64,000 nt of DNA from Octopus bimaculoides (lineage: Eukaryota). This document shows positions 26 to 25,504 of the stretch, piece after piece. A program made the translations under genes and the position numbers. Location: positions 13,701,580-13,765,579 of the forward strand of contig NC_069002.1 of NCBI RefSeq assembly GCF_001194135.2. The letters run 5' to 3'. Under the pieces are notes generated by a model that did no database searches, was not told where the DNA came from, and worked only from the letters and a program-made list of their open reading frames with translations. The stretch's first letter is position 1; every line of letters begins with the position of its first letter.

Positions 26-219
26 TTCATGCTAATTATTTCAAATATAGCTGTGAATCCAATAACTAATGCTTGAACGTAAGTTGGCAGAATCCTGCGA
101 GAGATTGCGTATGTTCCAAATGGACAAGCCACCATTGCAGTCAAAACAAAGGACACTTGAATCCAATGTTTGATTTTTGTACCTTTTGGCAACCAATAAT
201 GGCTTTCTTGAAGAGAATA
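26..219 (-). CDS. Coding exon 12 of EGF-7TM-RING gene (post-RING TM hairpin, TM8-TM9)
   Basis: ttttgcag|TATTCT...ATGAA|gtaagt; 194 nt, phase 0 to 2; YSLQESHYWL...FEIISM. Confidence 0.88.
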
Positions 220-3200
220 CTGCAAAATAAATAGTATTATTTCATTAATTTTTCTTTTAACGATGAAATTTTATTTTCATAAATAAAAACCTTCCATGTC
301 TTTTTAAATTGTTCTTGTTTTTTTCCTTTCTTACAGATAGAATTCTTTTCTCTCACCCTTATCTCTTTTTTTCCTTTCTTCCACAATCTTTTCAGACTTA
401 TCTGTTTCACACATACATTGTCTTTTCTCTCTCACACACATCTTCCTTTCTTTCACAAAATGATTTTCTCATACTCATATCTCTTCCCTCCTCCTAAACA
501 ATAAAGTCTGTCAATAGAATTTGGATTCGTCTTTTGTTCAGACAGTTTTGGTTCTCTAAGATATATCTAGTTCTTATTTTATTGAATACTTTGTCAAACC
601 ATTAAGTTATAGGGGAAAATGTTAACAAAGAAACGCATTTATTATAGGATTCAGTATAGTTTCTTATTTCTTTATTGTCCACAAGGGGCTAAACATAGAG
701 GGGGCAGACAAAGGGATTAAGTCGATTACATCGACCCTAGTGTGTAACTGGTACTTAATTTATTGACCCCGAAAGGATGAAAGGCAAAGTCGACCTCGGC
801 AGAATTTGAACTTAGAACGTACCGGCAGATGAAATACCGCTGAGCATTTTGCCCAGTGTGCTAACATTTCTGCCAGCTCGCCAGTATAGTTTCTATCTGC
901 CAAATTTAATTTGCAAGGCTTGCTGACCCAAGGTTATAACATATTTTTCTGAGTAGGATTGAACCTGCAACTACAGTTGCAAATTGAAGTTAACCATTCA
1001 GTTACATCCATTTCATTTTACTTTATCATTTTGGCTATTTGATAGAAAGGTTTTCAATGCAAGAAGGAAAGAAAAAAAAAAAGCTCACCTTTTCCAAACA
1101 AACTCTGCAAGTGGCATTTGCTGCTGTTGATTCACTCTGAGAAGTAAAAGAAACAAACATATTATGTCTAACTTAACAAAAAACGAGTTCCTAAAAACAT
1201 ATTGTTTGGAAGAATCTTCCATTACTCCTCTAACTATAGCACTTCATTCTGCTGATACTGTAATTATGTGAGAGCAGTAGCACACACACTTCATCTCTCT
1301 TTTGTTCAGCCAAATGTCACTCTCCTTGCAACCACTTCCTTTTGCAAGCCATCCTGCATTCTCAATATCATCCCTTACAGCTTTTTCTATTTTCCACTGA
1401 ACACCCCCTCATATCTGCTATCATTATTTCCTCTTCTGCCCAGGCCCACTCCTATTTTCCTTCACTTTTACCCCCAAATTAAGATTCATGCCTTCACACA
1501 TGTTCACCATTCACTTCTATCATCTCTAACCATCTGTCACTCTCACAAATCTTTCGCTTAACCTTCTCAATCCTCTCTGTCCCTATTTTCTTGTGCAACT
1601 TACTTAGAGCTTGTGAGTAAAATGGTGGATAAATTCAAAATGTAATGAGGTCTTAATCAACTTATATTAATTTTCTTTTGTGTGTATTTTATTCTTTTAC
1701 ATGTTTCAGTAAATGAGCTATAGCCATGCAGGAGCACCACTGCATCCTGAAAGTGCTGCAATACCAGATCAACTTGTGGCAAAGAATAAATTTAATATCA
1801 ATGGTCACAAATAGGGACTGCACCACATATTAAACTGATCAGAACAGACACTAGATTTTTATCATATCCAGAACAATCGCATGTCCTCCACTCTCGTCTT
1901 GATATCACACGATGTTTGGAAGCAAACACTGTTTGTTTTCAGTCTTCCATGGAAAATATGTCTGTCTATGAGGAATATTACCTTTCTTGGAAACAGTTGA
2001 GGGTTGACAGCAGGAAGTGCATCCAACTGTAGAAAATCTGCCTCAACTAATTCTGTCTGATCCATGCATGCATGAGAAAGCAGATATGGAAACAATATTG
2101 TGTTCACATGGAGGAGTATGTATGTGCATGTGTATATATACATATACACACACGTGTGTGTAGTGTATATATATATATATATATATTACACACACACATG
2201 TATTTGTGCACATGTGTTTTTCAATATGTCTAGTTGACTTACCTCAACTAACCATTGTCGTAGACAGTCATGGTGCACAGCAGACATGTCCCCTTTACAT
2301 TTGCAGGCTTGAATGAGAGGTCCACAGCTGACATTCTCTGGGTCATAACATATCCAACACAAGAGGTTCTGATCATCAACTGCTGCAAATATATCATAAA
2401 AAAAAAATCTAGCAAAAACCGAAGTCTTAGTATAAGTAGAAAGGCAGACAAATCACAAATCCCTTCAAGTAGATGGCCCTGCTCAATCTGTAGAAAAAGT
2501 GTAGGTAGAAATATGTACCTGGTGTAAGCTATGGACACATAAGAGGTGCAGCAATATCAAAAGAAGGTTAACTGGGAGGATAGATTTAGTGTGTGGCAGA
2601 TGCACAGGGGCAATTAACATCAAAGATGTATAGAAAATAGATTCTATCACATGCCAAGGAAAAAAAACTAGAAGCAGTTGATAGCTTCCGTTACCTAGGT
2701 GAACAAGTGGATGCTCTGAGAGTGTAGCTGCTAGAATAAGAATAGGCTGGGCAAAGTTCAGAGAGCTCCTACCTCTGCTGGTAACAAAGGGCCTCTTACT
2801 TATTGAAAAATAGACTGTATGATGCCTGTGTGTGAACAGCCTTGCTACACGGCAGTGAAACATGGGCTGTGAGTGCTGAGGACCTGTGTAGGCTTGAAAG
2901 GAACGAAGCTAGTATCCTCCGCTAGATGTGCAATGTCAGTGTGCATACAGAACTGTGTAAGTGCCTGCAGAGAAAAGTTGGACATAAGAAGCATCAGATG
3001 TGGTGTACAAGAGAGATGACTGCACTGGTATGGTCATGTGTTATGTATGGATGAGGACAGCTGTGTGACGAAGTGTCACACCCTAACAGTGGAGGGAACC
3101 TGTGGAAGAGATAGATCCAGGAAGACCTGGGATGAGGTAGTGAAGCACAACCATTGAACGTTGGGCCTCACAGAGGCAATGACAGTGACCGAGACCTTTG

Positions 3201-6200
3201 GAGATATACTGTGCTTCAGAAGACCCAGCAAGCCAAGTGGGAATGTACCCTTCAATTGTCAGGCAATATGCTGTGCTTGAGAAGACCTGTTGAGCCAAGT
3301 GTAATTGTAGTCGTGCCACCTAACTGGCACATAAAAAGTACCATTCAAGGGTGGCCGATGCCAGTGGCATGTAAAAAAGCAGTATTCGAGCATGGCTGAT
3401 GCCAGTGCTGCCTGACTGGAAAAATGAGCTAGGAAAAATGTCACTAAAACACACTAACAATTAGTTCTTTGTAAAGGCAGAAAGCTAGCAGAATTCAGGC
3501 AACACATTTAGATCAGTTCTGTATTATTGCTGTCATTCAGGAATTGTCCTTTTAAAAACAATAGAAAAAATGAAAATGAAATATAACAAGATGTTACTCT
3601 ACCTCCTCCAACACAAAAATTAAGTGTGTGTGTGTGTGGGGGGGGGGATACATATAATTTTCAAACTTACCAGAATTGTTTTTGGAGGCTTCTGTGCCTT
3701 CCTGTTGTCTGGTAGCAATGTTTAAGCTGGTTCTCAAACTCTTACCGCGGTCAAATGAAAGGAAAATCTTTTTTGGATTTAAAACCCATAATTCTTCAGG
3801 ACTGTGTAGAGATAACCGATGTTGGTCATTATTGTGATGGTGGTGAAAGTTGATTGAGTCAGAGAAAAATATCGAGAAAATAAGAGAGAGAGAGATTTGA
3901 GTAAAATACATGGTATTTTAATTTATTTTTGCAATATTATAATTTTAAATGGTGTAAAGTATAGCTGTGCTTGTATTTAAAGTTTAACAATTCTTGAGAA
4001 CAGCTTAAGAAAGGAAATTGACATGTTTAACAATGTCTTGGTTATCGTCATTGTTTTAATGTTCACTTTCCATGCTTGCATGGGTCAGATGAAATTCACC
4101 GAGGCAGATTTTATACAACTGGATGCCCTTCTTTGATGACAGGAAGGGCATCCAGTTGCATAAACCTTTTTCCAAGCAAGGTAATATTTTCCTTTGACCG
4201 CACGTTTTCACAGATGGTTGGAAATGAATGATCTCATTTGTATAATGGTGATATTTGTTTTATAAGCATCATAAATGTCAAGACAAGGGGTCAAACACAC
4301 ACACATACATATATATATATATACAATGGGCTTCTTTTAGTTTTCCAGCAACCAAATCCACTCACAAAGCTTTTGGTTAGCTGAAGGTTATAATAGGAGA
4401 CACTTACTCAAAGTGCCATGCAGTAGGACTGAACCTAAAGCCATGTGGTTGAGAAGCAAATTTCTTAACCACATAGCTATGCTTGTGTAAAAAAAACCCA
4501 AAAAACTCCCAGTTAATATGGCACGTATATAAAAAAAAAAACTATGTATGACAGTGAATAGCAGAAGTACAATTATTGCAGATGACTGAATTAAATAAAA
4601 AGTGATTAATATATGAAGCTAACTTACAAAGTCTGTTGAAACATTGGTAACAAATCCGTAAGTTGTAGAATGATTAATGAGGGAGGAATTGGGTACAGCA
4701 GCCAGTATAGAAGTTTAATTTCCAAGAAAGACTGATGATAGTAAGCGGAGAAAGTGGCTGACCATGAAGTATATGGCAGAAACATGCAAAAAGAAATGGT
4801 TATGTTGATGTGAAATAATGTGAATGTATGTTGTTTCAACCCTGTGAGTAAAAAGATAAAAAGGTGATGTAACTGTTATTTCTAGCAGAATGAGCAACCA
4901 TGTAGAGGCTCTAATTTGCTTGATATATTCAAGAATGTTGTATGTACTTCATGTGTATAATGCAAGTAAGTGTATATGTGCATATAAACATGCATGTTTT
5001 TTAGAATATATACATCCATGTTTGAATGCACATTACCAAATGATATGTTTTTTTTTTTTATAAAGACAGTAAGGTGTGATCATCTGATGGAGATTTGGCT
5101 GCTATTACAACCAAATCAAGCAACTGCATTGAAACTCCTTTGTTAGCTTAGTTCATACTTAACGTTGATGACAACAGTGGAAGACCTCTTTGAACTGAAG
5201 TAAATGATGGTTGACCTAAAAAGTAACTGTTAAATCAGACCTGACACTCCTGAACTTGAGTGAACAGAAACGATAATGGGTGGAGAGACACAAAAAGAAA
5301 AAAAAATCATATTAATAAATTGTAGAAATGAATGGGAGAGGAGAAGGGGCAGGGTTTACATTAATGTTAATGTAAACAAAACTGTTGTTATATATTTGTA
5401 ATCTTCCACAGATTTCACCCTTCCCACTGCCTCTACTCTGAGGTAGGCTTCTATATTACATATTCTGTTTTCGTTGTGTTAAGGAATGCATGAGTGTTCA
5501 CGAGGAGTAGAAAATGTCTGTTTCAGCTTACATATGTTTGTGTTTTTAAATCTGATAAAGAAGATTAAGATTTAAAAATCATTTAATAGGTTTCAGCTTT
5601 AAAACTATGGTATTTTGTTTGTCATTTTTCTTCTCACCAGTGATGGGCATGCTTGAGATATCACACGTTTGTGTGTGAGTGTTTGCATTTGTTTTGGGTT
5701 AGGTTTTTATTAAGACTGACAGACGGACAGATACATAGATGGAGTGGTGCGAGAGGGGATGATCTATATTTTACAGGATTAAAACAACACAATATTAACA
5801 AGGTTTTAAGGTTCATCAGAATGTGAGAAACCAAATACTATTAAAGCTGATTATCTCCAGTATTTATTACTGTGCAGACCCAATTTAAAAGCAATAATAA
5901 CTATATCACATAATCACCATTAATGAGGTGAGTTTATTTATTAAAATCCTTCATAATCCAACCCAAGTCATCCCAGAAAGCTCTTACACAGGATTGCTTT
6001 AAATATTTGTTGAATAGGTACGGGCATGGCTGTGTGGTTAAAAGCTCACTTTGCGGCCACATGGTTTTGAGTTCAATCCCACTACATAGCACCTTGGGCA
6101 AGTGTTTTCTATAGCCCCAGACTAATTAATACCGTGTGAGTGAATTTGGTAAACAGAAACTGAGCGGAAGCCCACTGTGTGTTTCCCAACTGCTTGACAA

Positions 6201-9200
6201 CTGGTGTTTGTTTGTTTGTATCCCAGTAACTTAGGGATTTGGTAAAAGAGACCAACAGAATAAGTGTCAGATTTTTAGAAAAAAAAAAATGAAAAAGTAC
6301 TGGGGTAAATTTGACTAAACCCTTCAAGGTGGTGCCCCAGCATGGCTGCAGTCCAATGAATGAAACTAGTAAAAGATACTAAAATGTCAAGTACCTTCCC
6401 CTCTGACACCACTCTGACTACTTCCAGTAAAGAGCTGTATTCTCATTGACATTTCTACCCCTTTTGGGGGGATAGTTTTATAGGTTTTCTAATTGTTTCA
6501 GCATGAATTCATGCATGTATGGTCCAGTCATTCAATTGTGGCCGTGCTGGAGCACCACCTTCGAAAATTTTCACCAATCCTATCAAGTATCAAACTGATA
6601 TAAGCACTAATGTTGTTTTGTTTGTATATGTTGAACGACTAAGTAATGGAGAAACACATCAACACTGGTTGTTGGTGGTTGGCACTCTGTCGGTTACGAC
6701 AACGAGGGTTCCAGTTGATCCGATCAACGGAACAGCCTGCACGTGAAATTAACGTGCAAGTGGCTGAGCACTCCACAGACACATGTACCCTTAACGTAGT
6801 TCTCGGGGATATTCAGCGTGACACAGAGTGTGACAAGGCTGGCCCTTTGAAATACAGGTACAACAGAAACAGGAAGTAAGAGTGAGACAAGGTTGTGGTG
6901 AAAGAATACAGCAGGGTTCGCCACCATCCCCTGCTGGAGCCTCGTGGAGCTTTAGGTGTTTCCGCTCAATAAACACTCACAATGCCCGGTCTGGGAATCG
7001 AAACCGCGATCCTACGACTGCGGGTCCGCTGCCCTAACCACTGGGCCATTGCGCCTCCACTACTGGTTGTTAAACCAGTCAAAACAAAAACATGCACACA
7101 CACGTATAAAATTTATTTTCATGATGGATGCCAACAGCTCCATATAGAAGTGCTGATCTCTCAAAGCGGATGGAACACGTGAAAGTGGGAGACCCAGGAA
7201 GACATGCGATGAAGTACTGAAGAATGATCTCAGGAAGCTGAACCTTTCAGGTGAGATGACAAATGACCAAGATACCTTGCACCAATAATTGCAAGCGTAA
7301 AAAAAGTGGACATTAAATGATTATATTTGCCCACAATGAGATTGAACCCAAAATCATATGGGGAAGCCAACTTTGTAACCATACAGCTATGCCGTCTCCA
7401 TCTTTTGAGGTTATCTCTTTTTTTTCTGACTCTAAAGTGGAGAAGCCAGTCTTTACTATGTTGGGGAAAAACCAGACTATGCTATGTTGATTAGTTGTGG
7501 ACAGTTATAGGATTTGGAATGGTAACAGGAAAGAAACTGCTCATATCACATATGATTGGCTGGTAGGCTGACACCCAGTCCCTCTCCTCCATATATATAC
7601 ACATCACATACTAAGTATTTGCGTGCATAAAAAAAAACCGTTACTAAGGCTACATAACATATCCCCAGCAAAACTAACATGCATAAAACTGTTTGTGAAC
7701 AAATACAAAATGGGTTTTTTTCTCAGTAAATAAAAATGACAAACTCAAAATTCCAAACCAAATAATCTAAAGTAGTCTTTCAAGAGGGTGGCAGAGGGGT
7801 ACAACTTAATTCCAAACAAATCTACCTAAGATCGGTGACATCAGCAGTACATATCCTGTTACTGCACCAATCTATGAAGAGGGCATCCACTTGTCTTAAG
7901 TAGATACTACCCCCTACTGGTAGCTCAATACAGGAATGACTAGAGTAAAGGCTAAAAAATGTCAGCAGAATGGCACCCAGGAATCATGACCTAGATGCAG
8001 CCTGGCTCTCTTAGAGTATAATGAGGGCTGAAACACTTGTTTGGTGGGGTTGTTCTTCTCTGAAGACCTACTGTTCAGCTCTCTTGAGTTTCTTATCACT
8101 TAAGGGGTTAAAAAATTTCTTCATTCTTCAACAACTAGCAAACCCTGAACAAAGCTAAAAGAGACCTGCAACAGTGTGCTGCCTTTTGCATCCAGGCAGG
8201 GGCTGATCGACAGCATAAAGACATCCTACACTGCATTCAAAGAAAGGTCGACCGAATGATAGATCTGCAGTCATTCACAAATGTAGTCCAGCCTCTGACT
8301 CGTGGACATGTTGTCCCCTACTCTCTCTTTCTTTCTCTCCTCTTAACGTTGACCTCTTCTCCCTTGAGCTGTCTAGTCCCATGCTACCACCACCAATCCA
8401 CTCCTGACTTATTTCTCTTCTCTCACCCCACCCATACTGTGATCCTCACCTCACCCATCACTATTCCTGCAGACCATCAATCCCTCAGTAATTCCATCTC
8501 GTGTGTCTTTCAGCAACCGTCAACTTACAATTGTTCAATAAGGAACATTAATTGCATTTATCTTTCCACACTTTCTGCAGGTTCTGAGGTGCCCTGAATA
8601 TCTTGGAAGAGGTAGGGTGGGGAAACACAGCCCTTTCTCCAAACCAAATCAATGTAAAAACAAAACAAAGTAGCTACTCCTTCACAAAGTCCCTAATGTT
8701 GACTCAAGAACTCAATGAAAGCTACCAATGACTTTCAAGGAATCATTATCTTTGGAAATATCCATAAAATGTATTGAAGATATTGAAGAGAAACATTAGA
8801 ATTTTGTATTTTCAATATTCATTTTACAGAAAAAATGGATTACATACATCATCATTATATATACTAACAGAAAGTCTGCTGGTGAGGATCACAGTATGGG
8901 TGGGGTGAGAGAAGAGAAATAAGTCAGGAGTGGATTGGTGGTGGTAGCATGGGACTAGACAGCTCAAGGGAGAAGAGGTCAACGTTAAGAGGAGAGAAAG
9001 AAAGAGAGAGTAGGGGACAACATGTCCACGAGTCAGAGGCTGGACTACATTTGTGAATGACTGCAGATCTATCATTCGGTCGACCTTTCTTTGAATGCAG
9101 TGTAGGATGTCTTTATGCTGTCGATCAGCCCCTGCCTGGATGCAAAAGGCAGCACACTGTTGCAGGTCTCTTTTAGCTTTGTTCAGGGTTTGNNNNNNNN

Positions 9201-13870: not shown

Positions 13871-13933
<63 letters not shown>

Positions 13934-15139: not shown

Positions 15140-15171
<32 letters not shown>

Positions 15172-18100
15172 ATGTATACACACATACAAACACACAAATG
15201 TATATGTGCACATACAAGTGAATATATATACACACACGCAAATATATGTATAAATACATACACATCCAATAAAGATAAACCAAATAATCCCATTACATAG
15301 ATGTGAAGTACTTTTAAAAAAACAAGAAAGCAAAATTCTATGGCATTCTGGGAGATTCCATTCCATTCCAGAAATTTCCATGAGTTGGTTGTGTGTGTGT
15401 GTGCACCTGCTTAAAAACTGTTCCATATATCAAAGTAAATTTTAAATTGTTGGTGGTGAGGTGGGGTTGGTAAGTCTAAAAGGGGAAAAGAGAAAGTGAA
15501 AAAGAGAGACCAGAAGTTAAGATTAGAGAAAGAAAGAGAGAGCTGATTAAAAAACTGAGGAGGAGAAATAAAGAACAACAAGAGAAATAGTGTCAGAAGA
15601 GGGGGGGGAGAAACTGGGGGAGAATATGGAAGAAGTAATTAGGTTGTAAATGAGAACGAGAGTAGATAGTAACAAAATTATTTTAGGATAGATTGAGGAA
15701 TAGACATGGATGAAATAGAAAATATAAGATTTGTTATTAAGATTATTAGAATCCCTAGAGATTACTTGCCAAAATCCAATGAAATAAGAACGTTACCTGC
15801 AATGGCCAACAGAGAAGAACTATTTCTTTAAATGTTATAGAAACTCCTGAGTCAAAGAAATGAATGATTCTACCACATACAGCGTGGGTGTTAACATTTT
15901 CTCTTCCTCCACAACCACCACTGCCATCATCATCTTCATCATCATCTCACCTCTCAATTTAAATTCCTTAGCATTGGTTGGACAGGTCTGCTACACAGTA
16001 AGCTATTACTCCAGTGAATCCCATGTCATTCACCTAAGGGGCCCTAATATCTGACAACTGACTTCATTACTTCTTGTTGCATCTTCTTTTTCATATCAGT
16101 ACCTCTCCTTGCAGTACATACTGCTTGCCCTGCCCCTACTCTACACAGGCATTCATTATATTTTTGTTTTACAAGTCTATGTCATCAGTTGAGGCCTTTG
16201 CTACCCAGCTGTTCCCTCTCTGCTGCCTTATGCTCCATCTTTCATGCAAGTCAGTGTTAAACATTGAATAAATGATTTCTTGAAATAGAGTTAAATGGAA
16301 ACAAATGCTTACTTATCTCTCCAGAATTCCTTAAGGACATCGGACAAAAGGAACAAAGCTGTTATGAGTTGTAAAAGGGCCTGAATAACCAATCCCAGTC
16401 TTGACATATGGAGTTGGCGCTGGTTAACATTACTCTCAGATTGAGCAAATGCTCCTCTCACCTGAAAAAAAAAAATACTTATTGTAGAATTTGATATTAA
16501 CAATAAAGAGATAATAGAGAATAAAAATAAAAAGAGCTATATATATATACATGGGTGCTTTGTTGGCTGTGTTATTGAATTCTATTCTTATTAAAAGAAA
16601 TATTACAGTTATCATTTGTAATCAAGGATGACTAGGTTCCATGATTTTACTAATTGTTTTAGGAGCCCATGAGGAGACAGACATCCTCTCAGTCCTTATT
16701 ACATTTTGACCCAAAAGCACATTCAGGGTGAGACAGCTACAGTAGCGCAGGGCCAGTACTCAATTGGTTGATCGAGAAAGGATGAAAAATCCACCACCCA
16801 CAAACAGAAACAGTCTCTCTCTTAGACTTCCACACAATTTACATCTACTATCAGACATTGAGTTCAAATCCTACCAAGATCATCATTGCCTTTCATCCTT
16901 TTGGGGTCAGTAAATAAAGTACTGGTCCAGCACTAGTGCAGTTGTCTCTCTATCTCTCGAGCTGTCACATTGTAGATGTGACATTAGGTCAAGTGCAGAA
17001 GGGCTGACAGAGTGTCCATGTCTGGTCATGATGACACGGACATCTAAAACAATTAGCAAAACCATGGAAACAAGTCATCCTTGATTGTTGAAGTATTTGG
17101 TTTAATGAGAAAATCAGAGCTAATTTGATAAGTTAATGATGGTAGTGAATCTCAACAATCCATTTAGCCATAAGACAACCTTGAAGACTTTGTGGCATAT
17201 CTAACATAGTAAATATGGAATCTGAAGATACTGGTGAAGTTGTGAGGACATGAATTAGTTAACAGGAAAGGACTGCAAAGCAGTTCAATTGCTGAAAGGA
17301 GTGAAGAATCTGATTCAAGCCTTGCTATATATATATATATATATAAAGAGAGAGAGAGATAGATATGCTGTTTAGCTCAAGGTCAGCCATAATTAAGCAG
17401 GCCTGTTATCAAAACCAGTCCAGTAATGACCAGCCTACCTATTATGTTCAGATATCCAAATATCTTAATTTTAAATTATCCAATATAGTCCCAACAATCA
17501 TCATTTAAAAGACGATAATGTATGATTTAAGAAAAATCTGGCTGCTATTTTGACTTGTAAATAGTCTCCATCATAGTTAGCATGGTAACAGGGTCAATGA
17601 GACATAACATGTTAATGTGTTTCTGTTGTGTTGCTTGCTATGGTTTCTATGGCAGCAGACATTTGGTAAAAACCAAATCCAAATCCATAGATATGAGCCA
17701 ATATTTCACAGCGACAAAGCTAAAACAGAAATAGTAGCAAAGGAAAGAAAAAAGCAAAAGTTAGAGAAGTGTGACTGTGTGGTAAGAAGTTTGCTTCCCA
17801 ACCACATGGTTCCGGGTTCAGTCCCATTGTTTGACACCTTGGGCAAGCATCTTCTGCTATAGCCTTGAGCCAACCAATGCCTTGTGAGTGGATTTGGTAG
17901 ATGGAAATTGAAAGAAGCCTGCTGTGTGCGCGTGCATGCATGTGTGTATGTGTGTGTGTTTCTTTGTATGTCCCCACTGCCACCATCACTTGACAATTGG
18001 TGTTGGTGTATTTACATATCTGTAACTTAACTGATTCTGCAAAAGAGACAAATAAAATAAGTACTAGTCTAAAAAACACTGGGTCGATTCTTTCAACTAA

Positions 18101-19448
18101 AATTTCTTCCAGGCACTGCCCCAGCATGGCCACAGTCTAACGACTGAAACATGTTAAGGATATAAAAAAATTTTTTTTAAATTGGAGTATGAAGCTATGT
18201 CACTTACCTTGAAGTATACCTCAACACCATAGATGAGGAAGAAGACGACCACCAAGAACATGAGGAATGCAAAAAACGCATCAAAGATCTTGTTAATCAT
18301 GTCCTGTTAAGATTAATTAATTAAAAACGTTGAAAATGGCAAATGTTTCATATCAAACCTTAACATTCATAATGAAAAAAAGTGAGAGAGAGAGAGAGAG
18401 ATGTAGAATGTTGATATAAAGTGTTGATAAATTGACCCTTGATCTTTTAAATCTGACTTGAAAGCAGCCCTTTAAGGAAACAATGTTCTTAAGGAATGAA
18501 TGACTATATCACCTCCCCACTTTCCTTTCATTTAAGTTTGTTTATGAACCAATGAGAAAACCCTGTATGGAAGTTCATCATCATCGTTTAACGTCCGCTT
18601 TCCATGCTAGCATGGGTTGGACGATTTGACTGAGGACTGGTGAAACCAGATGGCTACACCAGGCTCCAATCTGATTTGGCAGAGTTTCTACAGCCGGATG
18701 CCTTTCCTAACGCCAACCACTCCGAGAGTGTAGTGGGTGCTTTTATGTGCCACCGGCACGAAAGCCAGTCAGGCGATACTGGCAATGGCCACGCTCAAAA
18801 TGGTGTACTTTACGTGCCACCCGCACAAGAGCCAGTCCAGGGGCACTGGCAACGATCTCGCTCGAAAGTCCTTACACATGCCACGGGCACAAGTGACAGA
18901 AAGGCGACGCTGAGCACAGGTGCCATCACGATTTCGTCAATTCTTCTTCAAGAAATAGCAGTCAATTCTTCTTCAAGAAATAACAGTCAATTCTTCTTCA
19001 AGAAATAACAGTCAATTCTTCTTCAAATTACTCTGTTGCTTACTCCCAATGAGAAACTAAGAGTGATATGTTACATTAAATTTCTTATGGACTTTCCTGT
19101 CATTAAACAATGGGTGCTAGTTCTGTAATTTCTTTCTGAACAACCATACAGATTTATTTGTGATAAAATGTTTTGTGTTCACATAGGCTCACTTGCTCCC
19201 ACCAGCAAATCAAAACTGTCTATACAAGTGCACAAGTGTGACATGCAACAGATGTCAAAATGATTGCAGAACAACATGAAATGAAGTGTTTTGTTCAAGA
19301 ACACAATGCACTGTCTGTTCTGGGAATAGAAATCATGATCTCACGATCATGGGTGCAACACCCTAACCATTAGGCCATGCACCTATATATATATATATAT
19401 ATATATATATNNNNNNNNNNTCGTTCCAGTTAACACGATTTTTGCACT

Positions 19449-19521
<73 letters not shown>

Positions 19522-20279: not shown

Positions 20280-20317
<38 letters not shown>

Positions 20318-20658
20318 ATGCGAAGTGTTCAGATACATGTGTTGGTATATGTATGTGTATGCTGTGCACATATGTTCATATTAATTGATATGTGTATATA
20401 TGTGTGTGTGTGTGTGTATACAGGTTTGTGTGTGTGTGTGTGTGTGGTTGGGTGCATGTGTGAGAAAGTAAATACTTACTGCTTGCTTCTGGTTATTGAT
20501 GATATCAGTAAGGAAGAACCGAGCACCAAACAGCATGTATATGAAAACATTGAAAACTATGAATCCAACGAAGGATTTACTCAGGAACCGTGGTTGTTCC
20601 ACAGGAAGGTTGTTCAAATGAAAAGCCTGAAAGAACAAACTTCACAATTATTATAATA

Positions 20659-20753
<95 letters not shown>

Positions 20754-21406: not shown

Positions 21407-21443
<37 letters not shown>

Positions 21444-23187
21444 TGTCAACTGGCAGAATTGTTAGTACACTGGGTGAAATACTAAGTGACGTTTTGTCCA
21501 TCTCTACATTTGGAGTTCAAATTCTTCCGAGCTTGACTTTGCCTTTCATCCTTTTAAAGTCAATGTAATTGACTAGCCCCCTCCTGCAAAGTTTCAGAAA
21601 GATAAAGCCAAATTCAACACACAGCCCAGTCCAGGATTCGAACTCACAACCTCACGATTGTAAGCTCGACATTCTAACTACTGAGCCATGCGCCTTCACA
21701 ATCCTATAAGTAAACAGTATTCTATATAAAGCACCATCTGTAAAGTATATAAAAGAGGGGCATGCAAACAAGGCCGTGAAAAGGCTCTAGTAGGGTAGAG
21801 TGTATGTATGTGTAACCGGATGATAGTTGTGATGGTAACAATGATATGAATAAGACTTACCTCAGCCCAGTAACACACGATGAGTGTAAAACCAGTGAGA
21901 AGTAAAGGGTAATAGGCACACCACAGGTTTGAAAACATCTGGTCTGGAAGCTGGAGCTGAAACTAAATGAACATTGAAAGAAAGAAATAATAGATGTTCA
22001 TTTATAAAGCAATGGTGAGACATGTTAGCTCTGTACAATATCAGAATCTTTTATGAGTATTCTTTCCATGACTCAGGTTTAGCCAAGGAGAGAAGCTTAA
22101 AAGATAAAAAAACTAACAACAGTACATAGCAAAATCCTGACTATTTAAATTTTATCAATATCAAAGACCCTGTAGAAAGACCAAGTCCATGGAACAGTGG
22201 ACAGCTGGCTAAGAAGTTGGTCATTTGGTGCTTGTCGTTGCTACTGAGTTGTGTACATGCATACATACACATTCATTAGCTTACAGCTGTTTCAGCTGTA
22301 ATAAACTGTACACCCAGAGGTGAATGCCAGAACAACATTTTATGACTTCATCAGAACCTTAGCATGAAGTCATGTTAAGGCTCTGATGAAGCTATATCAT
22401 TCTCGCACTCACCTCATGTAACAGTTCCTTATAGCTGAAATAGCTGTAAGCCAATGGTTGTGATTATATTACTCCTGTTCTGTCATTCAATAATTAATGT
22501 GTTTGGTGTGTTGTATGTGCGTATGTTTATACACAACTCAGTGGCAATGACAAAATACAAACGACCAGCCTCCTGGTCTTTCTGCAGTGTCTTTGATAAT
22601 TATTAAGTTTAAATAGACAGGACTCAGCCATGTACTACAGTAGAGACACACACACAAACAGGCTTCTCTCAGTTTCTGTCCATTAAATCCACTTACACGG
22701 TTTGGCCAGTTTGGGACTATAGTAGAAGACACTTGCCCAAGGTGCCACACAGTGGAACGGAACACATTATCATGGGATTCGGAAGCAAACATTTTAACCA
22801 AAACTGCATCCATCTGTCCTCTTTATGTCTGTCTATCTATTAACCTGTTTATATTCATCTTTATTCATCTTTGCTTCTCTGTTCATGTGCAAACATCTTT
22901 AAAGGAGAAAAAGAAAGTGAGAAAAACAAAAGAGTTACATACCTTTGTAAAGAAGTAGATGGCTCTGATGGCTGTGGCACACAGTGTGAGGGCGTACAAC
23001 ATCTTTTGGGTTGTGATCTTAAAAGCACTCCACAAGGACTGCTTCTGTTCTCGGATGTACTGTGACCAAATACAGATACACTGGCAAATATGATAGAAAG
23101 CATTGTGTAACTAATCTGATGATGCTGGGAATTAGAGGTTATTTTACATAGGCATACACACACACACACACATATATATACATATAC

Positions 23188-23224
<37 letters not shown>

Positions 23225-25504
23225 CATACATACACACACAATGTGTATCTTGATGACTGCCATGAGGCAGGAAAGTATACTAGTCCTTATATATTTAATA
23301 CTCAATATTTCATATATTCAATAAGACATTCAATACTTCATTTCATTTTACTATTTATATTATATATTCCATATTCTATATCCCACATTAATTTTATAAG
23401 AATATAAATAAAACATAAAATCTCTTTTAAATAATATATTCCTCTATACACGATCATACAAAACCCTTTTTTATATTTTTTTATTTTTGTTCATATATAT
23501 GTATGTACATAAATGTTTATAAGTGTATGTGTTTAGAAAGAGAGAGAGAAGGCATGTGGCCCAGTGGTTAGGGTGTTGCACTCGTGATCAGAAGATCCTG
23601 GTTCTGATTCCCAGACCAGCAGTGCATTGTGTGTTCTTGAGCAAAACATCCTCATTTCCCATTTCTCCAGGCCACTCAGCCGCAAATAGGTAACTCTGCA
23701 ATGGACCGGTGTTCCATTCAGGCAGAATGTTCACCTGCCCACCTACCTAGCCAGAGCGTGGCATCATTCAAAGTGAGGAAAAGGAGAATGAGGAGGAGAG
23801 TGGTGCTGGTGTTCATGATGATGATGATGATGATGATGATACTTACTAGTTGTACCAAACAAACAACAGCCAAAACAACAAAAAGGGAACCAAATGCCAA
23901 ATAGTATTCTTTGTTGTCTTCTTTACAGGAACCTCCACGAAATTGTACCTGAAGAAAAAAAAATCATTAAACAATTTAATAGTGTTGTAAAAACTACAGG
24001 AATTTAGCATCAAGGAACTGGTTGGTATTGGTAAAGGTGGTACCTCTTACCCCACTGCACAGTACCTTTTATCCTACACAATGCAGGTACATCTTATCCC
24101 AATATAGAATAACAGGATATGAACTACCAACCTCTTGGCTGGTTGTCTGGTATTTTATCAACTCAGCCATCTGCATTCTCTAAGACAACACAGACAAGCG
24201 GCGAGCTGGCAGAAACGTTAGCACGCCGATCAAAATGCTTAGCGGTATTTCGTCTGCTGTTACGTTCTGAGTTCAAATTCCACCGAGGTCGACTTTGCCT
24301 TTCATCCTTTCAGGGTCGATAGATTAAGTACCAATTACACACTGGGGTTGATGTAATCAACTTAACCCCCTTTGTCTGTCCTTGTTTGTCCCCTTGTGGG
24401 CAATAAAGAAATACGACAGGTGACATGAAGTCACTTGCAAAACACACTACAATCTCTGACCTACAGAAGTCCTGTCTCCTTTCTTTCTCTCTCACTTCGT
24501 CCATCTTTACTTGCATTGTAGTGACCTGTCTTCCTCAGAGCTCACTAGTCCCCAGCCACATTCACTAAGACACTCACTCATCTCTTGATCTTTTCATCTT
24601 CCATATTGTACCCTCCCCCGACACCCACATCCCTGCACTAACCACAGAACCCAGTTTTACCTGTATCCATCAACTTCAACGGCTTAAGACAAACGACAAT
24701 GACATTGATGTCATTAGTCTCCAAGGGCCCACAAAGGTTATGGTCACAATCCCATCCTTGGACAAACCAAAGAGAAAACACAATAAAATACAATAATGGA
24801 ACATTAAATCATCATAATACACCATTGTACTCTCTGCCTCCCCCACTTCTCTGTTCATTCACTTATTTTTAAAAAATGGTTAAGATGGTTAAAGATGGTT
24901 AATACCTCTTGCTTATGAAGTAGAAGATATTTGCCTAAGGTGCTTTGCAGTGAACCCAGAACCATGTGGTTGAGAAGCAAACTTCTTAATTACACAACCA
25001 TGCCAGCATCTACAGTCATGCCTAAAAGTCCACAGCACATCCTTGATGCACACCAGTGCACTGAGATGCACAGAAGAGCACCAAAATGCACCATATGTAA
25101 CACATCTCTGCTCAAATGATTCTGTTCATTTATTGATTTATTTCACAGACATTGATCATAGCCTCAGCTAATTTCTCATTAGTTGCAGAGTACTTTCATT
25201 GAATAATTGTCTGAATTAACAAATCAAGATATATCTTATGAGGTTCACCTTTTAAGATATGATAAAGCGAATGATAAAGCAAAAAGAAGCTCTGGATATT
25301 GTTTGCAATGTGCTGGGTGGTGAGGTAGGGCAAGAAGAAAGGGGTGAAGATTATTTGGAATGAACTTACCAAACAAAGGCATTTGCCATCGTTACAAATT
25401 CCATGGCCAGAGCAGTTCAATGGACAATGTACCATGTTGCTCTGGAATGTCGAGATGTGATCTCTGATTATGCTTGTCCAATGTTGTGTAAGCAGTGACG
25501 TCAT
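26..25504 (-). CDS. Spliced gene, 3'-partial: EGF-like + 7TM + RING-CH + 2TM putative membrane E3 ubiquitin ligase (at least 491 aa). complement(join(26..219,1089..1136,2243..2382,3671..3801,10655..10753,16313..16461,18208..18303,20480..20626,21861..21956,22943..23080,23847..23948,25370..25504))
   Basis: All introns are GT-AG, phases match at every junction, and there is no internal stop. Translation: MTSLLTQHWTSIIRDHISTFQSNMVHCPLNCSGHGICNDGKCLCLVQFRGGSCKEDNKEYYLAFGSLFVVLAVVCLVQLCICIWSQYIREQKQSLWSAFKITTQKMLYALTLCATAIRAIYFFTKLQLPDQMFSNLWCAYYPLLLTGFTLIVCYWAEAFHLNNLPVEQPRFLSKSFVGFIVFNVFIYMLFGARFFLTDIINNQKQADMINKIFDAFFAFLMFLVVVFFLIYGVEVYFKVRGAFAQSESNVNQRQLHMSRLGLVIQALLQLITALFLLSDVLKEFWRDKLPVLSQNVFDIGFRIIEFGVSLWFPCVLWNCCSPEELWVLNPKKIFLSFDRGKSLRTSLNIATRQQEGTEASKNNSAVDDQNLLCWICYDPENVSCGPLIQACKCKGDMSAVHHDCLRQWLVESESTAANATCRVCLEKYSLQESHYWLPKGTKIKHWIQVSFVLTAMVACPFGTYAISRRILPTYVQALVIGFTAIFEIISM(K). 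The start codon is less certain than the internal exons. Confidence 0.9.
662..882 (-). mobile_element. SINE family A (GGCGAGCTGGCAGAAACGTTAGC...GTCGACTTTGCCTTTCATCC type)
   Basis: Matches copies at 14649, 24198, 36025, 40035, 42625, 47425, 47890, 50290 and 55445. Confidence 0.75.
1089..1136 (-). CDS. Coding exon 11 (RING-CH C7/C8)
   Basis: cttctcag|AGTGAA...GAAAAG|gtgagc; 48 nt; SESTAANATCRVCLEK. Confidence 0.88.
2243..2382 (-). CDS. Coding exon 10 (RING-CH C1-C6)
   Basis: atttgcag|CAGTT...GTTGAG|gtaagt; 140 nt, phase 1 to 0; CWICYDPENVSCGPLIQACKCKGDMSAVHHDCLRQWLVE. Confidence 0.93.
2420..3245 (+). mobile_element. RTE-clade LINE, degenerate 3' fragment
   Basis: Frame-broken translation with WPCSICRKSVGRN, FRYLG, GWAKFRELLPLL and GRPRKTW-like motifs. 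Confidence 0.75.
3671..3801 (-). CDS. Coding exon 9 (linker between TM7 and RING)
   Basis: ctacacag|TCCTGAA...TCTG|gtaagt; 131 nt, phase 2 to 1; PEELWVLNPKKI...KNNS. Confidence 0.88.
6020..6378 (+). mobile_element. SINE family B (TGGCTGTGTGGTAAG...GCCTTGTGAGTGGATTTGGTAG...GACTGAAACAAGTAAAAG type)
   Basis: Same family at 9805, 11692, 14938, 17775, 27905, 34583, 41375, 48140 and 62780. Confidence 0.75.
6680..7058 (-). mobile_element. tRNA-derived SINE family C, near-intact
   Basis: A box TGGCCCAGTGG and B box GGTTTCGATTCC; body GTACCTGTATTTCAAAGGGCCAGCCTTGTCAC; related copies at 23550, 37278, 57755 and 63690. Confidence 0.82.
8095..9514. repeat. Inverted duplication of about 356 bp; second arm duplicated across a 10-N gap
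   Basis: 8095-8450 is the reverse complement of 8881-9192 plus 9203-9514; identical as far as I can read. Confidence 0.8.
9805..9950 (-). mobile_element. SINE family B, 5' half
   Basis: Reverse complement of the family B head. Confidence 0.72.
10655..10753 (-). CDS. Coding exon 8 (TM7)
   Basis: ttcaaacag|ACTT...GTAG|gtaatt; 99 nt, phase 2 to 2; LPVLSQNVFDIGFRIIEFGVSLWFPCVLWNCC. Confidence 0.88.
11692..11990 (+). mobile_element. Two tandem SINE family B 5' halves
   Basis: Both contain GCCTTGTGAGTGGATTTGG. Confidence 0.72.
12950..13675 (+). mobile_element. RTE-clade LINE fragment (endonuclease-RT linker)
   Basis: NRDVVGEKCVRMDNG...KDAWKCHYERLL...IDKAIKDMKTGK. Confidence 0.72.
13680..13870 (+). 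mobile_element. Mariner 3' end with right TIR
   Basis: LIRRWNIAIEGNSDYVEK* followed by TTTTGACTCACCCTCG|TA. Confidence 0.68.
14649..14885 (+). mobile_element. SINE family A, near-intact copy
   Basis: GGCGGCGAGCTGGCAGAAACGTTAGCACGCCGGGCG head, B-box-like GAGTTCAAATTCC, tail ending AAAGAAATAA. Confidence 0.8.
16313..16461 (-). CDS. Coding exon 7 (TM6)
   Basis: ttttcag|GTGAGA...GATAA|gtaagc; 149 nt; VRGAF...KEFWRD. Confidence 0.9.
17775..18160 (+). mobile_element. SINE family B, full length
   Basis: Head, (TG)n linker and tail all present. Confidence 0.78.
18208..18303 (-). CDS. Coding exon 6 (TM5)
   Basis: cttaacag|GACATG...TTCAAG|gtaagt; 96 nt; DMINKIFDAFFAFLMFLVVVFFLIYGVEVYFK. Confidence 0.9.
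18578..18935 (+). mobile_element. Interspersed repeat family D (CATCATCGTTTAACGTCCGCTTTCCATGC...GGATGCCCTTCCT), probable retroposon
   Basis: Related copies at 1860-2090 (-), 4050-4290 (+) and 61585-61852 (-). Confidence 0.65.
18936..19026. repeat. 25-bp tandem repeat, about 3.6 copies (GTCAATTCTTCTTCAAGAAATAACA)
   Basis: Units start at 18936, 18961, 18986 and 19011; no spacers. Confidence 0.85.
19443..19533. repeat. (TTA)n microsatellite
   Basis: Direct reading. Confidence 0.9.
20480..20626 (-). CDS. Coding exon 5 (TM4)
   Basis: tctttcag|GCTTTT...CAAGCA|gtaagt; 147 nt; AFHLNN...NNQKQA. Confidence 0.9.
20660..20755. repeat. Compound (TTA)n(TAG)n microsatellite
   Basis: Direct reading. Confidence 0.9.
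21861..21956 (-). CDS. Coding exon 4 (TM3)
   Basis: agtttcag|CTCCAG...GCTGAG|gtaagt; 96 nt; LQLPD...IVCYWAE. Confidence 0.9.
22141..22616. mobile_element. MITE-like element with about 43-bp imperfect TIRs and internal palindromes
   Basis: 22141-22183 is an inverted match to 22575-22616; internal ttcatcagaacctta/taaggctctgatgaa inverted repeat. Confidence 0.4.
22943..23080 (-). CDS. Coding exon 3 (end of TM1, TM2)
   Basis: tttgccag|TGTATC...ACAAAG|gtatgt; 138 nt; CICIWSQY...IYFFTK. Confidence 0.9.
23847..23948 (-). CDS. Coding exon 2 (last EGF Cys, TM1)
   Basis: ttcttcag|GTACAA...CAACTA|gtaagt; 102 nt; VQFRGGSCKED...CLVQL. Confidence 0.9.
24198..24413 (+). mobile_element. SINE family A copy
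   Basis: Same head, body and tail as the 14649 copy. Confidence 0.78.
25370..25504 (-). CDS. Coding exon 1 (EGF-like domain); exon probably extends as 5'UTR to 25559
   Basis: ATG at 25504 with A at -3; CPLNCSGHGICNDGKCLCL|gtaagt; strong acceptor at 25560-25561, with in-frame stops between it and the ATG. Confidence 0.8.

What the first reader, a model, noticed from the sequence alone, without database searches (positions are those of the whole stretch)
26..25504. Receptor-like membrane E3 ligase: EGF + 7TM + RING-CH + 2TM in one polypeptide
Seen in sequence: 12 exons splice in phase into at least 491 aa. The domain order is a six-Cys EGF-like module (CPLNCSGHGICNDGKCLCLVQFRGGSC), seven hydrophobic helices, an intact RING-CH (C-x2-C-x14-C-x-C-x7-H-x2-C-x16-C-x2-C, with the LxxW helix), then two more TM helices. 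Established: RING-CH followed by a TM hairpin is the MARCH1/8-type E3 layout that ubiquitinates membrane proteins, and RNF43/ZNRF3 and MEGF8/ATRN-MGRN1 couple an ectodomain to a RING. Inference: with the N-terminus outside, 7 TMs place the RING in the cytosol. The protein would be a GPCR-shaped sensor fused to a MARCH-like ligase, possibly ligand-regulated. I know of no vertebrate protein with this architecture. My unverified recollection is that an uncharacterised insect gene (possibly Drosophila CG2991) is similar, so the family may be conserved but functionally undescribed. The RING exons are missing from the ORF track.
Basis: partly seen in the sequence, partly recalled or inferred. Interest (0 to 1): 0.88.

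Follow-up and report, generated by a model that had tools for sequence, protein, structure and literature searches.

The report
Seven-helix receptor fused to ubiquitin ligase
A real octopus gene, already predicted in databases but never studied, encodes a nine-pass membrane protein that joins a small EGF ectodomain and a GPCR-shaped, TOM1-type seven-helix bundle to a MARCH-like RING-CH ubiquitin ligase; the design is conserved from protists and sponges to amphioxus and was not found in vertebrates.

Summary
On the minus strand, 12 GT-AG exons (25504 to 26) splice in frame into 493 codons. These are 100% identical to residues 1-493 of the RefSeq model 'uncharacterized protein LOC106874178' of Octopus bimaculoides (548 aa). 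A 13th exon lies about 3.3 kb beyond the window's left edge. The three assembly gaps are all intronic.

The domain order is confirmed: a six-Cys EGF, seven helices, an intact C4HC3 RING-CH, then a two-helix hairpin. Pfam scores RINGv at 46 bits and EGF_Teneurin at 26.6 bits. The AlphaFold2 model has pLDDT 81, and all 50 listed Foldseek PDB matches are GPCRs (TM-score up to 0.64).

Three findings put the N-terminus outside and the RING in the cytosol: a disulfide EGF with a conserved NCS sequon, a family-wide positive-inside charge bias, and no signal peptide in any of 92 members.

Animal members reach Pfam THH1/TOM1/TOM3 only marginally (27 bits). Colinear proteins from the protists Diphylleia and Rigifila reach it clearly (42-48 bits), so the fusion predates animals. 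It occurs in sponges, cnidarians, protostomes, echinoderms, hemichordates and amphioxus. No vertebrate member was found, and every named member is 'uncharacterized'.

Function is inferred, not shown. The most likely role is a membrane-embedded E3 ligase whose 7TM and EGF module selects or senses targets. I rate it a new variant of a known kind, of moderately high interest.

The parts
25370..25504 (-). Exon 1 (aa 1-45): start codon, variable N-tail, EGF Cys1-5 including the NCS sequon
   Evidence: Exact spliced mapping to P0001. An in-frame stop lies 5 codons upstream of the ATG. Pfam EGF_Teneurin 26.6 bits against a cutoff of 24.3.
23847..23948 (-). Exon 2 (aa 46-79): EGF Cys6 and the first part of TM1
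22943..23080 (-). Exon 3 (aa 80-125): end of TM1, basic cytosolic loop 1, TM2 (R118)
21861..21962 (-). Exon 4 (aa 126-159): short outer loop 1 and TM3, ending in the invariant C-x-W-A-E motif
20480..20626 (-). Exon 5 (aa 160-208): cytosolic loop 2 (PRFLSKS), TM4, outer loop 2
18208..18303 (-). Exon 6 (aa 209-240): TM5 with the conserved FFLIYGVEVYFK cytosolic end
16313..16461 (-). Exon 7 (aa 241-290): variable cytosolic loop 3 and TM6
10655..10753 (-). Exon 8 (aa 290-322): TM7 (invariant N297, E307, W313, C316, W319)
3671..3801 (-). Exon 9 (aa 323-366): highly conserved post-TM7 segment SPEELWVLNPK, then a disordered, unconserved linker
   Evidence: pLDDT is below 50 for aa 345-367.
2243..2382 (-). 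Exon 10 (aa 367-413): RING-CH ligands C375, C378, C393, C395, H403, C406 and the L407/W410 helix
   Evidence: Pfam RINGv 46.4 bits against a cutoff of 21.6. Aligns to K3 (1vyx), MARCH8 (2d8s) and Doa10 (2m6m).
1089..1136 (-). Exon 11 (aa 414-429): last RING-CH pair C423-x2-C426
26..219 (-). Exon 12 (aa 430-493): invariant Y430, TM8, short outer loop, most of TM9. The donor is AA|GTAAGT at window position 25. Exon 13 (the last 54 aa and the stop) lies outside the window.
9193..9202 (.). Assembly gap inside intron 8, flanked by an exact 268-bp direct duplication (8925-9192 = 9203-9470)
14917..14926 (.). Assembly gap inside intron 7
19411..19420 (.). Assembly gap inside intron 5, between (TA)n and (AAT)n microsatellites

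Best explanation
This is one genuine protein-coding gene (O. bimaculoides LOC106874178). It encodes a nine-pass membrane RING-CH E3 ubiquitin ligase.

Shown here:
- The N-terminal ~55 aa (variable tail plus one disulfide EGF module) precede a THH1/TOM1/TOM3-type seven-helix bundle with a GPCR-like fold.
- A disordered ~35-aa linker follows, then an intact RING-CH, then a MARCH-like two-helix hairpin and a short tail.

Strongly inferred:
- The EGF faces the lumen or exterior. The RING, all the conserved loop motifs and the C-tail face the cytosol.

Inferred mechanism:
- The RING-CH recruits a ubiquitin-charged E2 at the membrane surface.
- The TM bundle plus hairpin, and possibly the EGF on the far side, pick out neighbouring membrane proteins. 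MARCH-family ligases are reported to recognise at least some substrates through transmembrane-domain contacts.
- The ligase ubiquitinates the cytosolic lysines of those targets and sends them to endolysosomal or proteasomal turnover.
- The cytosolic half of the 7TM bundle and the post-TM7 segment are the most conserved parts outside the RING. They most likely form a fixed docking platform that positions the RING-E2 or the substrate tails, rather than an outward-facing ligand pocket.
For: - Gene model. 12 in-phase GT-AG exons are 100% identical to the RefSeq model. The window is identical to the chromosome assembly.
- Single transcript. Colinear full-length homologues sit on intron-free contigs or transcripts.
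- Domains. RINGv 46.4 bits and EGF_Teneurin 26.6 bits. THH1_TOM1-3 scores 27 bits in coral and lobster members and 42-48 bits in protist members. Those protist proteins match the animal 7TM profile at 1e-39 and 6e-32.
- RING competence. The Zn ligands, I377, P392 and W410 are >=90% conserved. The domain aligns to solved K3, MARCH8 and Doa10 RING-CH structures.
- Fold. AlphaFold2 gives pLDDT 81 for the full protein and pTM 0.79 for the 7TM alone. All 50 listed Foldseek matches are GPCRs, with TM-score 0.55-0.64.
- Topology. Mean K+R is 5.9, 3.5, 5.3 and 4.9 in the predicted cytosolic loops against 0.6, 0.6, 1.3 and 2.8 in the outer ones. The NCS sequon is present in 75 of 92 members, and none of the 92 has a signal-peptide-like segment.
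- Conserved face. 46% of positions in the cytosolic halves of TM1-7 are >=90% conserved, against 15% in the outer halves. Post-TM7 scores 8 of 18.
- MARCH precedent. Most MARCH proteins have a RING-CH followed by two TMs, and the MARCH8-IL1RAP interaction requires TM segments (PMC4897099).
Against: - No experiment exists on any family member: no expression, localisation, E2 pairing or substrate data.
- I could not inspect octopus RNA-seq junctions. The single-transcript evidence comes from homologues and from the RefSeq prediction.
- The octopus protein itself does not reach the Pfam THH1 threshold.
- Foldseek E-values are weak (4e-4 to 3e-2) at 8-15% identity, so the GPCR likeness is at fold level only.
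- The subcellular compartment (plasma membrane, endolysosome or ER) is unknown.
Confidence: 0.6

Rival explanations
1. It is a ligand- or lipid-gated 'receptor ligase'. A conformational change of the 7TM bundle switches the attached RING-CH on or off, giving G-protein-independent signalling by ubiquitination. The trigger could be an EGF-bound partner, a membrane lipid, or an ion or proton at the buried R118/E307 site.
For: - The bundle has a GPCR-like fold.
- The EGF ectodomain is conserved.
- The charged intramembrane residues R118 and E307 are invariant or nearly so.
- The conserved TM3-end (WAExFH), TM5-end and TM6-start motifs sit where GPCRs transmit activation.
- The RING is tethered directly after TM7.
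Against: - Outer helix halves and outer loops are poorly conserved, and the outer loops are very short (3-4 unstructured residues in outer loops 1 and 2 of the model).
- No E/DRY, CWxP or NPxxY motifs are present (sequence).
- The ~35-aa linker between post-TM7 and the RING is disordered and unconserved, which makes a poor allosteric transmitter.
Confidence: 0.2
2. It is an ER or endomembrane quality-control or lipid-homeostasis ligase in the manner of Doa10/MARCH6 or the sterol-sensing TRC8/RNF145. The polytopic domain would sense membrane composition or engage misfolded membrane proteins, not surface cargo.
For: - The family profile's best PDB sequence match is the Doa10 RING-CH (E=3e-8).
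- The protein is polytopic (nine TMs).
- It has no signal peptide.
- It is ancient and close to single-copy across eukaryote lineages, as housekeeping ligases are.
Against: - K3 and MARCH8 RINGs match about as well as Doa10.
- There is no similarity to the Doa10 TD domain or to sterol-sensing domains. No PDB sequence match falls in the 7TM region, and the fold matches are GPCRs only.
- A conserved glycosylatable EGF module is more typical of proteins that work at the cell surface or in post-ER compartments.
- A core housekeeping ligase would not be expected to be lost in vertebrates.
Confidence: 0.12
3. The main function is that of the TOM1/THH1-type 7TM protein, for example an endolysosomal or tonoplast-like scaffold. 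The RING-CH would serve only to auto-ubiquitinate and set the protein's own turnover.
For: - The 7TM region is homologous to stand-alone plant TOM1/THH1 proteins.
- RING-less isoforms exist for some MARCH genes, such as MARCH9 (PMC4897099).
- A midge, Contarinia, has 314-341-aa isoforms that cover only the 7TM part.
Against: - The RING and the hairpin are as conserved as the 7TM, from protists to octopus.
- Such strict retention of a complete MARCH-like module is more than is expected for self-turnover alone.
Confidence: 0.06
4. The architecture is an annotation artefact: two neighbouring genes, a 7TM gene and a MARCH-like gene, wrongly joined by the gene predictor.
For: - The intron between exons 8 and 9 is 6.9 kb and contains an assembly gap.
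- Octopus transcript evidence was not inspected here.
Against: - The same colinear fusion occurs in hundreds of proteins from many phyla.
- It is present on an intron-free 2116-nt contig and in de novo transcripts of sponges and protists.
- All splice phases match.
Confidence: 0.02

Closest known systems
MARCH1/8-type membrane-associated RING-CH ligases and viral K3/MIR
   Same: Both have a C4HC3 RING-CH with the conserved CWIC...VH..CL..W signature, followed closely by a 'KY' strand, a two-helix TM hairpin with a short outer loop, and a cytosolic tail. Sequence matches to the solved K3 and MARCH8 RINGs reach E=8e-7 and 9e-6.
   Different: Here the RING is internal: an EGF module and seven TM helices precede it. 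It is not the orthologue of any vertebrate MARCH, because no vertebrate protein appears among the full-length hits. No substrates are known.
Plant TOBAMOVIRUS MULTIPLICATION 1/3 and THH1 (Pfam PF06454; not the ESCRT adaptor 'Target of Myb1')
   Same: The seven-helix domain is homologous. Family members exceed the Pfam cutoff of 25 bits, at 27 to 47.6 bits.
   Different: The plant proteins are ~290-aa stand-alone 7TM proteins with no EGF and no RING. All open literature on PF06454 concerns plants. The octopus sequence itself is too diverged to hit the Pfam model.
Doa10/MARCH6 (TEB4)
   Same: Both are polytopic RING-CH ligases. The Doa10 RING is the family profile's best PDB sequence match.
   Different: Doa10 has an N-terminal RING and 14 TMs with a TD domain. 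No similarity was found outside the RING.
G-protein-coupled receptors (class A/B/F folds)
   Same: The seven-helix bundle has the same topology. Foldseek TM-scores reach 0.64 (CB1), 0.61 (AT1R) and 0.59 (ACKR3).
   Different: Identity is 8-15%. The E/DRY, CWxP and NPxxY motifs are absent. Outer loops are very short. There is no evidence of G-protein coupling.
Receptor-like E3 systems: RNF43/ZNRF3 and MEGF8-MGRN1 (from general knowledge)
   Same: The concept is shared: an ectodomain-bearing membrane protein delivers RING activity to the cytosolic tails of membrane receptors.
   Different: Those are single-pass proteins (RNF43/ZNRF3) or a two-protein complex (MEGF8-MGRN1), with RING-H2 or C3HC4 RINGs. 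They show no homology to this protein.
Sterol-sensing polytopic ligases TRC8/RNF139 and RNF145 (from general knowledge)
   Same: A multi-TM sensing domain is fused to a cytosolic RING in one chain.
   Different: The TM fold is different (a sterol-sensing domain) and the RING-H2 is C-terminal. No sequence or fold match was seen here.

Membership tests
RING-CH / RINGv zinc finger (PF12906) | C4HC3 ligand order with RING-CH spacing | tested here: met
   C375-x2-C378-x14-C393-x-C395-x7-H403-x2-C406-x16-C423-x2-C426, read from the spliced product. The ligands are invariant or >=90% conserved in 92 sequences.
RING-CH / RINGv zinc finger (PF12906) | Profile score above Pfam's gathering threshold | tested here: met
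   46.4 bits against a cutoff of 21.6, aa 375-426.
RING-CH / RINGv zinc finger (PF12906) | Conserved hydrophobic E2-contact residues (Ile after Cys1, Trp in the helix) | tested here: met
   I377 is >=90% conserved and W410 is invariant. Both align to K3, MARCH8 and Doa10.
RING-CH / RINGv zinc finger (PF12906) | E2-dependent ubiquitin ligase activity | not testable with these tools
   Needs biochemistry.
MARCH-type membrane ligase (MARCH1/8 layout) | Cytosolic RING-CH followed by a two-TM hairpin | tested here: met
   TM8 at aa 445-470 and TM9 at aa 475-510 follow the RING. Charge bias puts the RING side in the cytosol.
MARCH-type membrane ligase (MARCH1/8 layout) | RING-CH at the N-terminus, ahead of all TM segments | tested here: not met
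   An EGF module and seven TM helices (aa 27-318) precede the RING.
MARCH-type membrane ligase (MARCH1/8 layout) | Orthology to a named vertebrate MARCH | tested here: not met
   No vertebrate protein is among the 120 best hits to the amphioxus member (all E<=1.6e-136), or among the 21 full-length representatives out of 28 that could be named. The automatic names 'MIR1', 'MIR2' and 'MARCH5' on three members reflect RING similarity only.
THH1/TOM1/TOM3 7TM domain (PF06454) | Profile score above Pfam's gathering threshold (25 bits) | tested here: inconclusive
   The octopus protein gives no hit at E<=1. Colinear homologues do: Porites 27.3 and Homarus 27.1; Diphylleia 47.6, Rigifila 42.1, P0315 34.7 and P0187 27.6. 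The link to octopus is transitive, through the animal 7TM profile (E=1.3e-39 to Diphylleia) and a direct BLASTP match (E=3e-60).
THH1/TOM1/TOM3 7TM domain (PF06454) | Seven transmembrane helices | tested here: met
THH1/TOM1/TOM3 7TM domain (PF06454) | Interaction with TOM2A-like or ARL8 partners, and tonoplast or lysosome-type localisation (from the plant literature, recalled) | not tested
   No tool was available for this; it is a lead only.
G-protein-coupled receptor | Seven-helix bundle with GPCR topology | tested here: met
   All 50 listed Foldseek PDB matches are GPCRs. TM-score normalised to the query is 0.40-0.64, and about three quarters of the matches are at or above 0.5.
G-protein-coupled receptor | Class-defining microswitch motifs (E/DRY, CWxP, NPxxY) | tested here: not met
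   The TM3 end reads C-x-WAE-x-FH, TM6 has no CWxP, and TM7 reads LWFPCVLWN (consensus).
G-protein-coupled receptor | Coupling to heterotrimeric G proteins or arrestins | not testable with these tools
   Needs experiments.
EGF-like domain | Six cysteines in EGF spacing, and a profile hit | tested here: met
   C-x3-C-x5-C-x4-C-x-C-x8-C. EGF_Teneurin scores 26.6 bits against a cutoff of 24.3. The family profile matches the EGF repeats of reelin and teneurin.

The most novel reading that the evidence does not exclude
The family could be an ancient, pre-metazoan class of 'receptor ubiquitin ligases'. In this reading a GPCR-fold TOM1-type bundle is gated by an EGF-bound partner, a lipid, or an ion at a buried Arg-Glu site. 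It would transduce that signal directly, without G proteins, by switching its own built-in RING-CH ligase. That would also reveal the long-unknown cellular function of the plant TOM1/THH1 family.
Probability: 0.2. Interest if true: 0.85.

Novelty: new variant of a known kind. Interest (0 to 1): 0.6.

Why it matters
- Membrane RING-CH ligases (the MARCH family and viral K3/MIR) are central regulators of surface-protein turnover. How they choose targets inside the bilayer is still poorly understood.
- This family hard-wires a complete MARCH-like unit to a GPCR-fold seven-helix domain and an ectodomain. It has kept that design from protists and sponges to amphioxus, so the combination must do something specific and important.
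- No paper in the searchable literature describes it.
- It offers a natural system for studying how a polytopic sensing or recognition domain is coupled to ubiquitin transfer.
- It may give the first clue to the native function of the TOM1/THH1 domain, which is known so far only as a plant host factor for tobamoviruses.
- Its apparent loss in vertebrates probably explains why it has been overlooked.

Tried and rejected
- CG2991 orthology. I had no access to the Drosophila protein. Five of the six papers that mention CG2991 were checked. They say only that it is of unknown function, ring-gland enriched, or 'an E3 ubiquitin ligase'. The question stays open.
- Protist query. Using the Diphylleia protein as a query in the word-indexed database gave only 12 hits and no further protists. 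The wider eukaryotic distribution remains unsampled.
- Remote relatives hidden. The 7TM-profile search lists only the best 150 of 490 hits. The remote stand-alone TOM1-like relatives, with E-values between 1e-18 and 1e-3, could not be inspected.
- Literature. Searches for RINGv+7TM, THH1+RING, PF06454/DUF1084, MARCH evolution in invertebrates, and LOC106874178 found nothing on this family.
- Rfam found no RNA family anywhere in the window.
- Two merged genes: rejected on the evidence of the cDNA-like contigs.
- N-in topology: rejected. It would put a disulfide EGF in the cytosol and the RING in the lumen, and it contradicts the charge bias.
- A cleavable signal peptide: rejected. None of the 92 members has an N-terminal hydrophobic stretch.

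Full report

Yes. I recovered the closest database protein with a draft concatenation of the open segments. It is P0001, NCBI 'uncharacterized protein LOC106874178 [Octopus bimaculoides]', 548 aa, called 'RING-CH-type domain-containing protein' in UniRef.

I then mapped P0001 exactly onto the window. There are 12 exons: 25504-25370, 23948-23847, 23080-22943, 21962-21861, 20626-20480, 18303-18208, 16461-16313, 10753-10655, 3801-3671, 2382-2243, 1136-1089 and 219-26. All have AG acceptors and GT donors. All are in phase. Together they translate to residues 1-493 of P0001 without a mismatch.

The window is 100% identical over 27 kb to chromosome CM046622.1 of assembly GCA_001194135.2. In that assembly a 13th exon (166 nt with the stop codon) lies about 3.3 kb beyond window position 1. 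An in-frame stop sits five codons upstream of the ATG at 25504.

**2. The assembly gaps**

All three flagged gaps are intronic: 9193-9202 in intron 8, 14917-14926 in intron 7 and 19411-19420 in intron 5. They cannot disturb the reading frame. The first gap is flanked by an exact 268-bp direct duplication (8925-9192 = 9203-9470), which is the signature of unmerged contig ends. The third lies between microsatellites.

**3. Domain anatomy**

- Pfam places RINGv at aa 375-426 (46.4 bits, cutoff 21.6) and EGF_Teneurin at aa 27-55 (26.6 bits, cutoff 24.3).
The eight ligands, I377, P392 and W410 are invariant or at least 90% conserved across 92 family members.
- The octopus RING aligns ligand for ligand with the solved RING-CH domains of KSHV K3, MARCH8/c-MIR and Doa10.
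- Hydropathy gives 7+2 hydrophobic segments.
- AlphaFold2 run on the 92-sequence alignment gives mean pLDDT 81 and pTM 0.66. It shows seven long helices, a disordered linker (aa 345-367), a folded RING, and two more long helices.
- Foldseek against the PDB lists only GPCRs among its 50 best matches, for the full model and for a 7TM-only model with pTM 0.79. TM-scores reach 0.64 (CB1), 0.61 (AT1R) and 0.59 (ACKR3).
- Foldseek E-values are weak (about 1e-3 to 3e-2) and identity is 8-15%. 'GPCR-shaped' is therefore true at fold level only. The E/DRY, CWxP and NPxxY motifs are absent (consensus).

**4. Is it one polypeptide?**

I could not inspect octopus RNA-seq. The fused order is, however, not an artefact of gene prediction.

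- P0007 is 49% identical and colinear with the octopus protein over 537 residues, from the EGF to the C-tail. It is an uninterrupted ORF (nt 86-1798) on a 2116-nt contig assembled from run SRR23453231.
- Many other members sit on 2-3-kb contigs.
- Trinity transcripts from sponges and protists carry the same order.

**5. Topology**

Three independent lines put the N-terminus outside and the RING in the cytosol.

- The EGF module needs disulfides. Its NCS sequon is present in 75 of 92 members.
- Across the family, mean K+R in the predicted cytosolic segments is 5.9, 3.5, 5.3, 4.9, 2.6 and 3.0. In the predicted outer segments it is 0.6, 0.6, 1.3, 2.8 and 1.2.
- A RING has to meet cytosolic E2 enzymes.

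None of the 92 members has a signal-peptide-like stretch. The short N-tail is presumably translocated by TM1, as in many GPCRs; that step is inference.

**6. What the seven helices are**

- The octopus sequence does not itself reach the Pfam THH1/TOM1/TOM3 model. Coral and lobster members do, marginally (27 bits, cutoff 25).
- A 7TM-only profile searched against 1.84 billion representative proteins found 490 hits at E<=1e-3 and 77 at E<=1e-30.
- The more divergent full-length representatives are from sponges (Ephydatia, Oscarella, Sycon, Corticium) and from two non-animal CRuMs protists, Diphylleia rotans and Rigifila ramosa.
- The two protist proteins carry EGF plus THH1_TOM1-3 plus RINGv. 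Their THH1 scores of 47.6 and 42.1 bits are well above the cutoff.
- The Diphylleia protein aligns colinearly with the octopus protein from the EGF to TM9 (31% identity, E=3e-60).

So the seven-helix domain is a true TOM1/THH1 homologue, and the whole fusion predates animals. One caveat is that the protist sequences come from transcriptomes. Their lower identity to animals than any animal-animal pair argues against animal contamination.

**7. Distribution**

Named members come from the following groups:

- molluscs, brachiopods and nemerteans
- priapulids, chelicerates, crustaceans and collembolans
- several insect orders: Hymenoptera, Orthoptera, Odonata, Hemiptera and Lepidoptera, plus a midge
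- cnidarians and sponges
- echinoderms, hemichordates and amphioxus

No vertebrate or tunicate appears among the 120 best hits to the amphioxus protein (all E<=1.6e-136). None appears among the 21 nameable full-length 50%-identity representatives out of 28. Loss in vertebrates is therefore well supported, though not proven.

Every informative name is 'uncharacterized' or 'RING-CH-type domain-containing'. The few names such as 'MIR1', 'MIR2' and 'MARCH5' are automatic transfers from RING similarity.

**8. Clues to mechanism**

Conservation is strongly asymmetric.

- In the cytosolic halves of TM1-7, 46% of positions are at least 90% conserved, against 15% in the outer halves.
- The model leaves only 3-4 unstructured residues in outer loops 1 and 2.
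- Outside the RING, the most conserved stretches are the TM3 end (C-x-WAE-x-FH), cytosolic loop 2 (PRFLSKS), the TM5 end (FFLIYGVEVYFK), TM7, and the post-TM7 segment SPEELWVLNPK.
- The linker to the RING is disordered and unconserved. Only about 18 residues separate the RING from TM8, so the RING is held at the membrane next to the hairpin.
- R118 (TM2) and E307 (TM7) are near-invariant and invariant charged residues inside the bilayer.

My best reading is a membrane-embedded E3 ligase. The C-terminal half is a complete MARCH-like unit that recruits an E2. The TM bundle and hairpin, and perhaps the EGF, select neighbouring membrane proteins. The conserved cytosolic face positions the RING-E2 or the substrate tails. 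The MARCH review supports the precedent: most MARCHs have a RING-CH followed by two TMs, and the MARCH8-IL1RAP interaction requires TM segments (PMC4897099).

It is weakened by the poorly conserved outer half of the bundle and by the floppy linker. ER quality-control or lipid-sensing roles (Doa10, TRC8/RNF145 style) and a purely self-regulatory RING are lesser rivals.

**9. Comparison with what is known, and novelty**

- It works like a MARCH ligase. It fails the family's layout criterion of an N-terminal RING, and it has no vertebrate orthologue.
- It contains a TOM1/THH1 domain, but it is not a stand-alone TOM protein.
- It has a GPCR fold but none of the GPCR motifs.
- The gene and its domain hits are already visible in RefSeq, UniProt and Pfam.
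- Six full-text searches found no description of a 7TM-RING-CH family. All papers that mention PF06454 or DUF1084 concern plants.
- Whether Drosophila CG2991 belongs to the family could not be tested. The papers say only that it is of unknown function or 'an E3 ubiquitin ligase'.

I classify it as a new variant of a known kind. The architecture is uncharacterised, ancient and widely conserved, and its function is entirely inferred.

**10. Verdict**

The mechanism is inferred. Confidence is about 0.95 that this is a single real gene with this architecture, about 0.85 for the topology, and about 0.5-0.6 for the substrate-selecting E3 model. Interest is 0.6.

Noticed in passing
window 60118-60837 (+), and probably 63252-63659 (+): These are exons of the neighbouring gene OGG1 (8-oxoguanine DNA glycosylase). 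Pfam gives OGG_N 79.7 bits and HhH-GPD 29.7 bits. The downstream ORF ends '...GEYAGWAQAV', which looks like an OGG1 C-terminal exon but had no Pfam hit. OGG1 lies head-to-head with the ligase gene, about 35 kb away.
   Followed up: partly
window 8925-9192 and 9203-9470: An exact 268-bp direct duplication flanks the 10-N gap at 9193-9202. It is most likely two overlapping contig ends that the assembler did not merge. It lies in an intron and is harmless to the gene model.
   Followed up: yes
window, e.g. 4342-4477, 6027-6161, 9808-9946, 14945-15080, 17769-17907, 27923-28063, 34589-34730, 62791-62928: A ~140-bp SINE-like interspersed repeat has at least 15 copies (74-86% identity, both orientations). 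Most copies lie in introns of the ligase gene. It accounts for the recurring pseudo-peptides such as 'HMVLGSV...TLGKCLLL' in the six-frame translation.
   Followed up: partly
window 31849-33571 (+) and 55551-55931 (+): These are degraded retroelement-like ORFs. One looks by eye like a non-LTR retrotransposon endonuclease fragment but had no Pfam hit. One has a weak, sub-threshold C2H2 zinc-finger match. One is a 126-aa ORF that by eye resembles retroelement remnants and has only a weak, sub-threshold Pfam match.
   Followed up: partly
window 43700-45350 and next to most N runs (27563-27889, 34903-35879, 46711-47415, 49565-50155, 56292-56668): Long (TA)n, (CA)n and (AAT)n microsatellite tracts abut the large assembly gaps in the intergenic half of the window. 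No Rfam family is present anywhere in the window.
   Followed up: no
protein residues R118 (exon 3, window ~22965) and E307 (exon 8, window ~10700): R118 is conserved in at least 90% of members and E307 is invariant. Both are charged residues inside TM2 and TM7. They may form a buried pair or a binding site.
   Followed up: no
homologues P0179 and P0358-P0360 (Contarinia nasturtii), not in the window: A gall midge has 314-341-aa isoforms that cover only profile positions 1-247 of the 7TM region. They could be RING-less isoforms or a truncated gene model in Diptera, which bears on the open CG2991 question.
   Followed up: no
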